The notes below the pieces were generated by a model that did not search any database, had not been told where the DNA came from, and was given only the letters and a program-made list of their open reading frames with translations. The position numbers and the translations under genes were made by a program. A DNA stretch of 63,053 nt, the filler included, from Octopus bimaculoides (taxonomy: Eukaryota): NCBI RefSeq assembly GCF_001194135.2. It is 5 parts of 5 records of this genome, joined end to end, with 100 filler letters (N's around TTAATTAATTAA, not from the genome) between each part and the next. Parts side by side here need not be neighbours in the genome. Positions count along the whole stretch, not along the records: positions 1 to 23,573 come from NC_068985.1; 4 more parts are not named here. One strand, written 5' to 3'. Positions 3,404-11,623 of this stretch are shown piece after piece (position 1 is the stretch's first letter; each line of letters begins with the position of its first letter).

Positions 3404-3912
3404 TTTCGGGGTCGATAAATTAAGTACCAGTTACGCACTGGGATCGATGTAATCGACTTAATCCCTTTGTCTGTCCTTGTTTGTCCCCTCTGTGTTTAGC
3501 CCCTTGTGGGCAATAAAGAAATAAGAAACGTTAGCACGCCGGGCGAAATGCTTAGAGGTGTTTCGTCTGCCGTTACGTTCTCAGTTCAAATTCCGCCGAT
3601 GTCGACTTTGCCTTTCATCCTTTCGGGGTCGATAAATTAAGTACCAGTTACACACTGGGGTCGATGTAATCGACTTGATCCCTTTGTCTGTTCTTGTTTG
3701 TCTCCTCTACGTTTAGCCCCTTGTGGGCAATAAAGTAATAAGAAACGTTATTATGCCGAGCGAAATGCTTAGCGGTATTTCGTCTGTCTATACGTTCTGA
3801 GGTCAAATTCCGCCGGGATCGATAAATTAAGTACCAGTTGTGTACTGGGGTCGATCTAATCGACTGACTCCCTCCTCCAAAATTTCGGGCCTGTGCCTAG
3901 AGTAGAAAAGAA
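3404..3912 (+). mobile_element. Head-to-tail trimer of SINE family B
   Basis: Three consecutive units share GTTAGCACGCCGGGCGAAATGCTTAG / GTTCAAATTCCGCCG / GGGGTCGATAAATTAAGTACCAGTT, joined at AAGAAATAAGAAACGTT. Confidence 0.9.
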
Positions 3913-3915
3913 TAT

Positions 3916-4112
3916 TTTAAAGGCAGCGAGCTGGGCGAAATCCTTNNNNNNNNNNNNNNNNNNNNNNNNNNNNNNNNNNNNNNNNNNNNCGCCGAAGTCG
4001 ACTTTGGCTTTCATCCTTTCGGAGTCGATGAAATGAGTGTCAGTTGTGCACTGGGGTCAATATAAACGACTTACCCCTTCTCCCTGAACTTGCTGGCTTT
4101 GTGCCAATAGTA
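3916..4112 (+). mobile_element. SINE family B copy (spans a gap)
   Basis: AAGGCAGCGAGCTGG head; GTCGACTTTGGCTTTCATCCTTTCGG core. Confidence 0.85.
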
Positions 4113-8630: not shown

Positions 8631-8869
8631 ACTCTTTTACTCTTTTACTCTTTTACTTGTTTCAGTCTTTTAACTGTGGCCATGCTGGAGCACCGCCTTT
8701 AGTCGAGTAAATCGACCCCAGGACTTATTCTTTGGAAGCCTAGTACTTATGTACTTATTCTATCGGTCTTTTACGCCGAACCGTTAAGTTACGGGGACGT
8801 AAACAGACCAGCATCGGTTGTCAAGCGAGATTGGGAGGACAAACACATACACACACACACACACACACA
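8631..8869 (-). mobile_element. SINE family A, 3' half
   Basis: (CTCTTTTA)n tail plus CTTGTTTCAGTC..GGCCATGCTGGAGCACCGCC..TCGACCCCAGG; the element runs into a gap. Confidence 0.9.
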
Positions 8870-9659
8870 NNNNNNNNNNNNNNNNNNNNNNNNNNNNNNN
8901 NNNNNNNNNNNNNNNNNNNNNNNNNNNNNNNNNNNNNNNNNNNNNNNNNNNNNNNNNNNNNNNNNNNNNNNNNNNNNNNNNNNNNNNNNNNNNNNNNNNN
9001 NNNNNNNNNNNNNNNNNNNNNNNNNNNNNNNNNNNNNNNNNNNNNNNNNNNNNNNNNNNNNNNNNNNNNNNNNNNNNNNNNNNNNNNNNNNNNNNNNNNN
9101 NNNNNNNNNNNNNNNNNNNNNNNNNNNNNNNNNNNNNNNNNNNNNNNNNNNNNNNNNNNNNNNNNNNNNNNNNNNNNNNNNNNNNNNNNNNNNNNNNNNN
9201 NNNNNNNNNNNNNNNNNNNNNNNNNNNNNNNNNNNNNNNNNNNNNNNNNNNNNNNNNNNNNNNNNNNNNNNNNNNNNNNNNNNNNNNNNNNNNNNNNNNN
9301 NNNNNNNNNNNNNNNNNNNNNNNNNNNNNNNNNNNNNNNNNNNNNNNNNNNNNNNNNNNNNNNNNNNNNNNNNNNNNNNNNNNNNNNNNNNNNNNNNNNN
9401 NNNNNNNNNNNNNNNNNNNNNNNNNNNNNNNNNNNNNNNNNNNNNNNNNNNNNNNNNNNNNNNNNNNNNNNNNNNNNNNNNNNNNNNNNNNNNNNNNNNN
9501 NNNNNNNNNNNNNNNNNNNNNNNNNNNNNNNNNNNNNNNNNNNNNNNNNNNNNNNNNNNNNNNNNNNNNNNNNNNNNNNNNNNNNNNNNNNNNNNNNNNN
9601 NNNNNNNNNNNNNNNNNNNNNNNNNNNNNNNNNNNNNNATATTTTTTGTTGGGGCTCCA

Positions 9660-10662
9660 ACATCTGGTTTAATTCCTAAGTTTTCTGAAAGATACACATT
9701 TTTTAAATGGAAATTTTGTAGGGATACGTTTTCGATAGAGTAAATTGCAATTTATTAGGAAAATAAAACCATACCTGTATTGCAAATATACAAATGAGAA
9801 ACGTGATTTATTTAATTTCATTTTATTTTTGAAAATTAGTATTCATTTTATAATTTTTGAGTAAGCATCGAGAAATTTGACAAAAGTTAAATCTTATAAT
9901 AATTCTGCTTGTCACACCGTTACTTAACCCGTCCGTAACGCTTTCACGTGATTAGTTAAAGAGAAAGTCGAAGAGCGAGAGAAAAAGAGGAAGAAAGAAA
10001 ATGTGGGAGAGAAAAAGATGGAGAGAGAAGCGTCCATGAGTTAGAAGGAATGTAATTGTAACGCTTTCACGTGATTAGTTGAAGGGAAAGAGAGAACAGG
10101 AGGGAGAAAGAAAAAGGAGAGAGAAAAAGGGGATAAGGTGAAGAGTAAGATGGTGGTGAAACTGAAAGGTATACGCAAATTGAAATATGTATAGACTTTG
10201 ACCCATCGTCTTGGCTTATATGTTACCAACGAAGTGGTCTCCAGAGTATATCATGTTCCATTAAATTTTTAGCCCCGTGAAATTGTGACCCCTATATTTT
10301 ATATCTAAAATGATTTTATTTACTATAAAATTTTTCTTTTCTATGTAATGAATTGTGGACCATGTAAATTTTAAAATGCAAAAATAAGAAAAATGGAAAA
10401 ATAAGAGTGACTATTTATTCTATGAGAGCTTTGTATTAAGCCTATAAAATTGTGCGTAAAGTATATAAAGTGTATATATAAAGTGAATTGAATAATCATC
10501 GCATTCCAATTTCCTTTACTCTTCAATGAGTAGCAAATAAGTGACTATCTTTTGATACAGACACAACATAGGCTACATTTTCAGGGTTTTTTGGATGAAG
10601 TTTTCAGATATAACCCAGTAGGTTTACCATTAAATCCGTGAAATATTAACGGGTCCCGCTAG
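9660..10662 (+). mobile_element. Non-autonomous Helitron-like element, 3' part
   Basis: Ends with the hairpin CCGT-GAAATATTA-ACGG (10636-10652), then CTAG (10659-10662) followed by T. Internal short duplication TAACGCTTTCACGTGATTAGTT. The 5' TC end is not visible. Confidence 0.5.
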
Positions 10663-10785
10663 TTATGATTATTGTACGTAAGCTATATTTCCTGATCCTG
10701 CATGTCACATGTTACCAATATTAGAACAGCATACGGTTGTAATATAAGAATGAATTCGTTTTTATCGTTTTAGTCGTTTTGACGT

Positions 10786-11284
10786 TCATAGCTGACGACG
10801 AGAAAGAACGCGGAAGCGCATGAGTCTAACGATCCAATGACGTCATTCACGGTCTAATGTGTTTTCATACATATTGTCCAGGAGGATAATTTCCGCAGCG
10901 AAATCCCCCCCACCGCATTTTCCGAGTGTCCTCGAACGAGTTAAATATTACTTTACACGATCATATTTTACTCAGCGCTGATTGGTGCGACTGTATTTAA
11001 TTCTAGCTTGACCAAGCTTTACGCAGATAGGTGATGTACCATATGCCGTTCTAATGTAAGAATGCATTCATTTTTATTGGGTTGTTCTTCACAGATTGTG
11101 TGCTCGCAGCTGACGACACGAATGCAGAAACGCATTTGTTTTACGACCCATTAACGTCATTCACAGCCCAAAGTCTTTTCACGCATGTCATCCGGGAAGA
11201 GAATTTTTTCCCGGGGCTATTTCAGCAGTAGACGTTCTCCCCACGTCCGAGTGTGCACAAGCGTATTAATACAACTTTACACGA
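10786..11284 (+). ncRNA. Two diverged tandem ~315-bp units, each with a degenerate type I hammerhead ribozyme core
   Basis: Unit 1: TCATAG-CTGACGA-N14-GAAGC-GCATGA-GTC-TAACGA (10786-10832). Unit 2: TCGCAG-CTGACGA-N10-GAAAC-GCATTT-GTT-TTACGA (11104-11146). Further shared blocks are ACGTCATTCAC, CCGAGTGT and ACTTTACACGA. Confidence 0.55.
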
Positions 11285-11623
11285 ATAATTTATCTTTCTA
11301 CTATATCATTTTCTCTATTTTTTTGGCATATGAATTAAAAGAAAATTTTTATTATCTTCTATCTTCATCAGTAACTTGATTTTCTATGGGGTTTTTTCTT
11401 AGGTATAGACATTCTTATATCAGAATTTTTGACACAGTATCCATGTTTATTTCTGACTACAACAGCTGTTCCTCAGTGCTTATTTGAATTTCTTCCGAGT
11501 CTTTATGTTCTTCATTCAAATACCATTGAGGTAAACTTTGCTTTCATCCTTTCATGGACGATAAAATACCAGTCTGCTACTTGGGTCAATATAATCAATT
11601 TGCTGGCCTTGAGGTAAAATTAG

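What the first reader, a model, noticed from the sequence alone, without database searches (positions are those of the whole stretch)
10786..11284. Retrozyme-like tandem: two ~315-bp units whose consensus rebuilds a type I hammerhead
Seen: two diverged direct units (offset 318-324 bp) whose best-conserved block is CTGACGA..GAA(A/G)C-GCAT..-GT(C/T). The flanks TCATAG/TCGCAG and TAACGA/TTACGA give the consensus stem I UCGUAG:UUACGA, with different damage in each copy. Stem III approximates the palindrome ACGCAUGCGU. Predicted cleavage sites (10826 and 11140) are 314 nt apart. Established: metazoan non-LTR retrozymes are tandem monomers of a few hundred nt, each with a type I hammerhead, often with palindromic loop III, and they produce circular RNAs. 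Inference: this is a fossil of an octopus retrozyme family. These copies are probably inactive (GAAG in unit 1; GUU triplet and weak stem II in unit 2).
Basis: partly seen in the sequence, partly recalled or inferred. Interest (0 to 1): 0.85.

Follow-up and report, generated by a model that had tools for sequence, protein, structure and literature searches.

The report
Decayed tandem repeat, hammerhead-like motif
Two old, diverged copies of a ~314-base repeat each carry the letters of a hammerhead self-cutting RNA in the right order, but neither copy could work and no other copies could be reached, so it is either a dead 'retrozyme' or a coincidence, and ordinary either way.

Summary
The repeat is real: about 1.8 head-to-tail copies of a ~314-bp non-coding unit (10720-11037 and 11038-11290), 69-76% identical, found nowhere else in the window.

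Both copies carry CTGACGA ... GAA(G/A) ... GU(C/U) at matching positions, with spacing typical of animal type I hammerheads.

Neither copy is a hammerhead by any test:
- Rfam models give nothing, even at about 10 bits.
- A model I built from four proven retrozyme hammerheads scores unit 2 at 8.2 bits, which is noise level, and does not list unit 1.
- Unit 1 has G at the essential A15.1. Unit 2 has no helix II.

The "consensus hammerhead" appears only if the favourable base is picked at every site where the copies differ. One base of the proposed palindrome is in neither copy. The block is not the best-conserved part of the unit, there is no compensatory change, and the 10.1-11.1 pair is C-G rather than the near-universal G-C.

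Against pure chance, a null simulation gives about 7e-5 per repeat pair for a pattern this good.

No cephalopod DNA could be reached, so the decisive test (other copies) was not run.

My estimate is about 50% coincidence in an ordinary decayed duplication and about 40% dead retrozyme relic. Interest is low either way.

The parts
10720..11037 (+). Unit 1 of the direct repeat (full unit, about 318 bp). GC is 41% and CpG o/e is 1.7.
11038..11290 (+). Unit 2 of the direct repeat, truncated at about 253 bp. Similarity to unit 1 ends near 11287-11292. It has lost 7 of unit 1's 18 CpGs to TG/CA.
10786..10832 (+). Hammerhead-like block of unit 1: UCAUAG-CUGACGA-CGAG/AAAGAA/CGCG-GAA-G-C/GCAUGA/G-U-C | UAACGA. 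Position 15.1 is G (A is required), helix I pairs 4/6 and helix II 3/4. The energy of the hammerhead fold is -0.3 kcal/mol.
   Evidence: no Rfam hit; not listed by model R1
11104..11146 (+). Hammerhead-like block of unit 2: UCGCAG-CUGACGA-CACGAAUGCA-GAA-A-C/GCAUUU/G-U-U | UUACGA. All core letters are present and helix I pairs 5/6. There is no helix II, because of a 4-nt deletion plus CG>TG/CA changes. GAAA is held in the loop of a competing 8-bp hairpin (11118-11125/11132-11139).
   Evidence: 8.2 bits, E = 2.2 with R1; no Rfam hit
10738..10767 (+). Best-conserved block of the unit (17/20 identical; partner at 11050-11079). It lies upstream of the hammerhead-like block.
   Evidence: (D3)
10827..10851 (+). 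Conserved block just 3' of the putative cleavage site. It holds the 12-nt palindrome AATGACGTCATT (10836-10847); its partner in unit 2 is degraded.
   Evidence: (D2)

Best explanation
This is an old, non-functional tandem duplication: about 1.8 copies of a ~314-bp, CpG-rich, non-coding unit lying among SINEs and microsatellites. It has been decaying neutrally through substitutions, CpG loss and small indels. The hammerhead-like run of letters is a coincidence that common descent carried into both copies. No ribozyme is or was encoded, and the locus does nothing today. The repeat, its decay and the inactivity of both copies are shown. That the resemblance is coincidental is inferred.
For: - No hammerhead family of Rfam matches, either at gathering score on the whole piece or at E<=10 on 801 nt.
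- Nothing matches on the 63-67-nt blocks alone either, where a 10.4-bit chance hit to a microRNA was still listed.
- A covariance model built from four experimentally cleaving retrozyme hammerheads (sequences from PMC7229834 Suppl. Table 2) scores unit 2 at 8.2 bits, E = 2.2. That is second among nine noise-level hits. Unit 1 is not listed.
- A single copy is no better than 25% of shuffled windows.
- The piece holds four other CTGANGA..GAA..UH sites with no stems.
- There is no compensatory change. Every difference in a stem breaks the pair in one copy.
- The block is conserved only at the array's average.
- Both copies have C at 10.1. G10.1-C11.1 is described as the most conserved pair after A15.1-U16.1 (PMC3088659) and as highly conserved (PMC4209133).
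- 2.1-1.1 is G.U, where all four reference ribozymes have A-U.
- The circular fold has z = -1.3, which is unremarkable.
- No RT, GIY-YIG or other Pfam domain remnant appears in six frames of 9639-11625.
- A six-frame search of the units found no relative.
- Ordinary tandem duplicates greatly outnumber retrozymes, so the base rate favours this reading (my own knowledge).
Against: - The joint pattern is rare under my null model: 7e-5 per simulated repeat pair. An alternative, slightly less parsimonious alignment of helix II gives CGCG/CGCG, that is 12/12 pairs, seen in 0 of 60,000 simulations.
- In the hammerhead register 76% of cells pair, against 26-43% when the partners are slid by 1-3 columns.
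- The spacing is what canonical animal type I hammerheads have: helix I of 6 bp, helix II of 4 bp with an A-rich 6-nt loop, and helix III of 2 bp with a near-palindromic loop.
- Unit size, tandem arrangement and GC below 45% fit non-LTR retrozymes.
- The number of broken pairs per copy (3 of 12) and of core changes (1 and 0) is what about 15% neutral decay of an intact ribozyme would give.
Confidence: 0.5

Rival explanations
1. This is a dead relic of a hammerhead-bearing tandem retroelement: a non-LTR retrozyme, or the related pseudo-LTR of a Penelope-like element. In the living family, read-through transcripts of tandem units would self-cleave after GUC, giving ~314-nt monomers. A host ligase would circularise these, and a Penelope-like reverse transcriptase would copy them back into DNA as head-to-tail arrays. 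Here both units have since lost activity. The whole mechanism is inferred from the known family; nothing of it is shown at this locus.
For: - Head-to-tail units of 314 nt with 41-43% GC fit the family's description (150-450 bp, GC <45%).
- All 11 fixed core letters are present in unit 2 and 10 of 11 in unit 1, in the right order and spacing.
- Helix III, of 2 bp capped by a near-palindromic 6-nt loop, resembles the coral (AGUACU) and mussel (GCGC) retrozyme ribozymes.
- CpG decay independently supports two favourable choices: G2.4, and CGCG as the 3' strand of helix II. Unit 2 lost 7 of 18 CpGs to TG/CA.
- The null simulation gives 7e-5.
- A best-case ancestor would fold as a hammerhead at -6.8 kcal/mol, like the mussel (-5.7) and axolotl (-6.2) ribozymes.
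- The non-integer 1.8-unit array is natural for copies made from multimeric or circular RNA.
Against: - Neither copy passes any hammerhead model.
- The locus fails the working definition of a retrozyme, which requires a TRF-detected tandem with at least two consecutive complete hammerhead motifs.
- C10.1-G11.1 and G.U at 2.1-1.1 depart from the consensus.
- The ancestral state of the essential 15.1 position (G or A) is undecidable from two copies.
- There is no covariation, and the ribozyme block is not preferentially conserved.
- No further copy, no Penelope-like ORF remnant nearby and no evidence of a family were found.
Confidence: 0.4
2. These are two neighbouring copies, or internal sub-repeats, of some other mobile element. 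One possibility is tandem 'monomer' promoter repeats from the 5' end of a retrotransposon: CpG-rich units carrying a CCAAT plus TGACGTCA (CRE-like) site. In that case the hammerhead-like letters would be incidental.
For: - The units are richer in GC and CpG than their surroundings (o/e 1.7 and 1.3 against 0.98), as inserted foreign sequence would be.
- A perfect 12-nt palindrome, AATGACGTCATT, preceded by CCAAT lies in one of the best-conserved blocks.
- A 66-nt stretch between the two similar parts has no partner, so 'element - spacer - element' is possible.
Against: - There is no ORF or Pfam remnant downstream or upstream.
- There is no tRNA-like part.
- There are no terminal repeats and no other copy in the window.
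- The palindrome is intact in only one unit.
Confidence: 0.1

Closest known systems
Metazoan non-LTR retrozymes (tandem ~150-450-bp repeats with type I hammerheads; Cervera & de la Pena 2020, PMC7229834), e.g. the Mytilus galloprovincialis ~350-390-bp retrozyme
   Same: - Head-to-tail arrangement.
- Unit of 314 nt and GC of 41-43%.
- Order and spacing of CUGANGA / GAA / GUH.
- Helix II of 4 bp with a 6-nt A-rich loop (unit 1).
- Helix III of 2 bp with a near-palindromic loop.
   Different: - Only 1.8 units, about 70% identical, and not detected by TRF.
- No complete hammerhead in either unit.
- C-G instead of G-C at 10.1-11.1, and G.U instead of A-U at 2.1-1.1.
- No sequence similarity to the coral or mussel elements.
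- No family, no RNA and no cleavage shown.
Minimal hammerheads in pseudo-LTRs of Penelope-like elements (Cervera & de la Pena 2014, PMC4209133)
   Same: - Type I topology.
- A weak, palindromic helix III that suggests action as a dimer.
- Occurrence in tandem.
   Different: - Those have a long helix II (6-8 bp), a short helix I (4-5 bp), an extra unpaired base after A9 and a G10.1-C11.1 pair. None of these is seen here.
- No RT or GIY-YIG remnant lies beside the array.
Ordinary decayed tandem duplication / short satellite remnant
   Same: - Two adjacent diverged copies.
- No coding capacity.
- Neutral-looking substitution pattern (44 transitions, 27 transversions, CpG loss).
- Setting among SINEs and microsatellites.
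   Different: The hammerhead-like arrangement is rarer than my null model predicts.

Membership tests
Hammerhead ribozyme, type I (Rfam RF00163 and related models) | Match to the family covariance model | tested here: not met
   - There are no hammerhead hits at gathering score.
- There are none at E<=10 on 801 nt or on the 67-nt and 63-nt blocks.
- My own model from 4 proven retrozyme hammerheads gives unit 2 8.2 bits (E = 2.2, noise level) and does not list unit 1.
Hammerhead ribozyme, type I | Invariant core C3 U4 G5 A6 N7 G8 A9 / G12 A13 A14 / A15.1-U16.1 / H17 | tested here: inconclusive
   Unit 2 has all of them (with GUU). Unit 1 has G at 15.1, so it fails. Which state is ancestral cannot be told from two copies.
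Hammerhead ribozyme, type I | Three helices around the core, including helix II starting with the highly conserved G10.1-C11.1 | tested here: not met
   - Unit 1: helix I 4/6; helix II C-G, G-C, A.G, G-C.
- Unit 2: helix I 5/6; no helix II.
- 10.1 is C in both copies.
- The hammerhead fold of unit 1 is worth -0.3 kcal/mol.
Hammerhead ribozyme, type I | Compensatory changes in the stems across copies | tested here: not met
   0 pairs have a change on both sides. All differences break a pair in one copy. With only two sequences the test has little power.
Hammerhead ribozyme, type I | Self-cleavage after H17 | not testable with these tools
   Needs in vitro transcription of the units and of a family consensus.
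Non-LTR retrozyme | Tandem repeat of about 150-450-bp units with GC below 45% | tested here: met
   1.8 units of about 314 bp, GC 41-43%. TRF itself does not report the array.
Non-LTR retrozyme | [quoted passage not shown] | tested here: not met
   Neither unit has a complete motif.
Non-LTR retrozyme | A multi-copy family in the genome | not testable with these tools
   - There is no other copy in the 23.5-kb piece.
- Protein-space searches of all six frames found nothing.
- The same database also lacks the window's abundant SINEs and ORFs, so it does not cover this genome.
- The metagenome scan gave only chance matches.
Non-LTR retrozyme | Expressed as highly self-paired circular RNA | tested here: inconclusive
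   The circular MFE z-score is -1.3 for the unit, against -3.0 (coral), -0.9 (mussel) and -3.3 (axolotl). No RNA data are on hand.
Penelope-like element pseudo-LTR | Adjacent RT / GIY-YIG ORF or its remnant | tested here: not met
   No Pfam match at E<=1 in six frames of 9639-11625. Beyond that lie assembly gaps.

The most novel reading that the evidence does not exclude
Its type I hammerhead would have an unusual C10.1-G11.1 helix II (CGCG/CGCG) and a palindromic GCAUGC loop 3. Intact members elsewhere in the genome would make ~314-nt circular RNAs, and this locus would be a decayed dimer of that family.
Probability: 0.35. Interest if true: 0.4.

Novelty: new member of a known kind. Interest (0 to 1): 0.2.

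Why it matters
If the relic reading is right, it would extend hammerhead retrozymes to one more animal lineage. It would also point to a family whose ribozyme departs at the most conserved stem pair. That is a modest addition to a kind of element already described from corals, mussels, amphibians and many other invertebrates. This locus itself is dead in either case and has no bearing on any open question. If the resemblance is chance, the value is only cautionary. A 'consensus' built from two diverged copies by picking the helpful base at each difference can rebuild a small ribozyme motif, so family-level evidence is needed before such a call.

Tried and rejected
- **Protein-space route to other copies.** A 58-aa stop-to-stop ORF over the block found no candidates. 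All six frames of both units joined into one query found nothing at E<=10. Exact look-ups of two ORFs of the units and of ten window ORFs found none on record.
- **More DNA from the same genome.** A six-frame query of the window's SINE-like repeats found nothing. That shows the protein collection does not cover this genome's non-coding DNA, so searches are weak negatives.
- **Metagenome scan.** The pattern CCAWTRACGTCATTCACRG gave 46 loci. All match only the pattern itself over 17-26 nt (one 34-nt match at 82% identity), so they are chance.
- **Similarity to known retrozymes.** Local alignment to the coral and mussel retrozymes scores within shuffles.
- **RNA fold stability as a discriminator.** Rejected, because a genuine mussel retrozyme has z = -0.9.
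- **tRNA-derived SINE.** No tRNA-like part was found.
- **A snoRNA and a microRNA match.** These score 16.8 and 10.4 bits against gathering scores of 37.6 and 64, so they are chance.
- **Literature.** No paper links hammerheads or retrozymes to octopus or cephalopods. Nothing on a ~315-bp octopus satellite turned up.
- **Polarising differences by CpG decay.** This helps for two sites only. The essential 15.1 site stays undecided.

Full report
**1. What is in the sequence**

The region holds two head-to-tail copies of a non-coding unit.
- The repeat finder reports matching blocks at start-to-start offsets of 312, 314, 318, 324 and 325 bp. The longest is an ungapped 87-nt stretch, 74% identical.
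- blastn of unit 1 against the whole piece finds unit 2 at E = 3e-13, with a second piece at E = 0.006, and nothing else.
- MAFFT gives 76% mean column identity. Over 228 ungapped columns the identity is 69%.
- Similarity covers about 10720/10726-10963 against 11038-11287. The last ~66 nt of unit 1 has no partner after 11290, so the array is about 1.8 units.
- Tandem Repeats Finder does not report it, even at score 30.
- The units are GC-richer (41-43%) and CpG-richer (observed/expected 1.7 and 1.3) than the piece (0.98).
- The piece itself is a gap-ridden (13 runs of N), AT-rich stretch full of microsatellites and SINE-like repeats. It has no convincing ORF.
- That the source is an octopus was not tested by any tool.

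**2. The hammerhead-like letters**

- Unit 1 reads UCAUAG-CUGACGA-CGAGAAAGAACGCG-GAA-G-CGCAUGAG-U-C|UAACGA.
- Unit 2 reads UCGCAG-CUGACGA-CACGAAUGCA-GAA-A-CGCAUUUG-U-U|UUACGA.
- The putative cleavage sites, 10826 and 11140, are 314 nt apart.

Unit 1 has G at 15.1, where A is essential. Its helix I pairs at 4 of 6 positions, and its helix II is C-G, G-C, A.G, G-C.

Unit 2 keeps every core letter, and its helix I pairs at 5 of 6 positions. It has no helix II, because of a 4-nt deletion and CG>TG/CA changes. Its GAAA sits in the loop of a competing 8-bp hairpin.

The hammerhead fold of unit 1 is worth -0.3 kcal/mol.

Two details of the observation do not hold.
- The block is not the best-conserved part. 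It scores 12-15 of 20 in sliding windows, against 17/20 at 10738-10767 and at 10941-10960, and 16/20 at 10827-10851.
- The proposed palindrome ACGCAUGCGU needs a C that neither copy has.

**3. Direct tests for a hammerhead**

- Rfam's covariance models give no hammerhead match at gathering score on the piece or at E<=10 on 801 nt.
- There is none on the 67-nt and 63-nt blocks alone, where a 10.4-bit chance hit was still listed.
- I took four retrozyme hammerheads that cleave in vitro (coral, mussel, two axolotl) from Supplementary Table 2 of PMC7229834. I aligned them and built a model.
- Over the piece with filters off, unit 2 scores 8.2 bits (E = 2.2). That is second among nine noise-level hits. 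The best hit (10.7 bits) is a chance match inside a SINE copy. Unit 1 is not listed. This model is small and over-fitted to four sequences, so I give it limited weight.
- On the two-sequence alignment, 76% of cells pair in the hammerhead register, against 26-43% when partners are slid. No pair has changed on both sides, and each difference breaks the pair in one copy.

**4. Chance or not**

One copy alone is unremarkable.
- The piece holds six CTGANGA..GAA(A/G)..U-H sites. Four of them have no stems.
- Dinucleotide shuffles yield 0.26 sites as good as either unit, and 25% of shuffles have at least one.
- The two copies share descent, so they count as one event.

The joint pattern is unusual, however. 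I simulated 60,000 repeat pairs with the units' own composition and the observed pattern of identical and differing columns.
- A site with the core kept in both copies (at most one copy-specific change) and at least 11 of 12 stem pairs recoverable from one copy or the other arose in 4 cases (7e-5).
- If every core letter may be taken from either copy, the rate is 1e-2.
- An alternative alignment of helix II (6 rather than 7 matches of 10) gives CGCG/CGCG and 12 of 12 pairs. That was seen in 0 of 60,000 simulations under the strict rule.

CpG decay is real here. Unit 2 turned 7 of unit 1's 18 CpGs into TG/CA, against 2 the other way. It independently supports two of the favourable choices: G at 2.4, and CGCG as the 3' strand of helix II. 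It says nothing about 15.1.

**5. Fit to the known family**

The literature describes canonical animal type I hammerheads as follows (PMC4209133):
- helix I of 6 bp;
- helix II of 4 bp;
- helix III of 1-2 bp capped by a small palindromic loop.

They sit in tandem repeats of 150-450 bp with GC below 45% (PMC7229834). The locus fits that geometry. The mussel ribozyme's GAAAC-GCGC-GUC is of the same style as GAAAC-GCAU(G/U)(A/U)-GU(C/U) here. A best-case ancestor would fold as a hammerhead at -6.8 kcal/mol, within the range of the real ones (-5.7 to -10.7).

The departures are these.
- 10.1-11.1 is C-G. That pair (G-C) is called the most conserved after A15.1-U16.1 (PMC3088659).
- 2.1-1.1 is G.U, where all four references have A-U.
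- The working definition of a retrozyme, a TRF-detected tandem with at least two consecutive complete motifs, is not met.
- The circular-RNA fold z-score (-1.3) does not discriminate, since the genuine mussel element has -0.9.
- No RT, GIY-YIG or other domain remnant is found in six frames of 9639-11625.
- There is no tRNA-like part.

**6. The missing test**

- Searches in protein space with one ORF and with all six frames of both units found nothing.
- The same database also lacks the window's abundant SINE-like repeats and ten of its ORFs. It does not cover this genome's non-coding DNA, so those are weak negatives.
- No paper in the library links hammerheads or retrozymes to cephalopods.

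**7. Weighing**

The estimate below is my own inference, not a computed result.
- Under a relic hypothesis, about 15% decay per copy predicts roughly what is seen: 3 of 12 pairs broken per copy, and 0-1 core changes.
- Under chance, the pattern has a probability of about 1e-4 per repeat pair.
- Against the relic stand three things: the low base rate of retrozymes among ~300-bp tandem duplicates (I guess 0.1-2%), the C-G at 10.1-11.1 (perhaps a ten-fold penalty), and scores below 10 bits where I would have expected about 20 for a lightly damaged typical hammerhead.
- These factors nearly cancel. I put coincidence in an ordinary decayed duplication at about 0.5, a dead retrozyme or Penelope-like relic at about 0.4, and another repeat type (for example CpG-rich promoter-like monomers with the CCAAT/TGACGTCA site) at about 0.1.

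**8. Verdict**

At best this is a dead member of a well-described kind of element. Interest is low. A genome-wide BLAST and a family consensus would settle it in minutes.

Noticed in passing
window 3404-3822; also 3990-4092, 12220-12322, 14105-14281: A 217-bp SINE-like unit is present as two tandem copies (~90% identical), with several further partial copies dispersed in the piece.
   Followed up: partly
window 8638-8869 and 22361-22590; inverted relative near 23190-23330: A second dispersed repeat family (82-89% identical copies). Each copy ends in an AC/GT or ATGT microsatellite.
   Followed up: no
window 21398-21530 and 21756-21885: A block that is 100% identical over the 121 nt 21410-21530 / 21765-21885 (offset 355) lies on either side of the N gap 21531-21764. 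It looks like an assembly artefact rather than a biological duplication.
   Followed up: no
window 17127-17216 and 17218-17307: Two adjacent 90-91-bp direct copies, 81% identical, of unknown nature.
   Followed up: no
window 10836-10847 (unit 1); 11150-11161 (unit 2): A perfect 12-nt palindrome, AATGACGTCATT (CRE-like TGACGTCA core, preceded by CCAAT), lies 10 nt after the putative cleavage site. It is in one of the best-conserved blocks and is degraded in unit 2.
   Followed up: partly
window 11118-11139: Unit 2 forms an 8-bp hairpin (ACGAAUGC / GCAUUUGU) with AGAAAC in its loop. It competes with any hammerhead fold. Unit 1 has only a short version, so it is not conserved.
   Followed up: yes
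window 10720-11290: The units have CpG observed/expected of 1.7 and 1.3, against 0.98 for the piece, and GC of 41-43% against about 36%. This suggests sequence of foreign (inserted) origin rather than duplicated local DNA.
   Followed up: partly
window 4793, 23096 (+); 7634, 12098 (coordinates on the reverse-complemented piece, as printed): Four further CTGANGA..GAAA..UH letter patterns without stems. That makes five independent sites, against 1.7 expected from shuffles. It is a mild excess and is probably compositional.
   Followed up: partly
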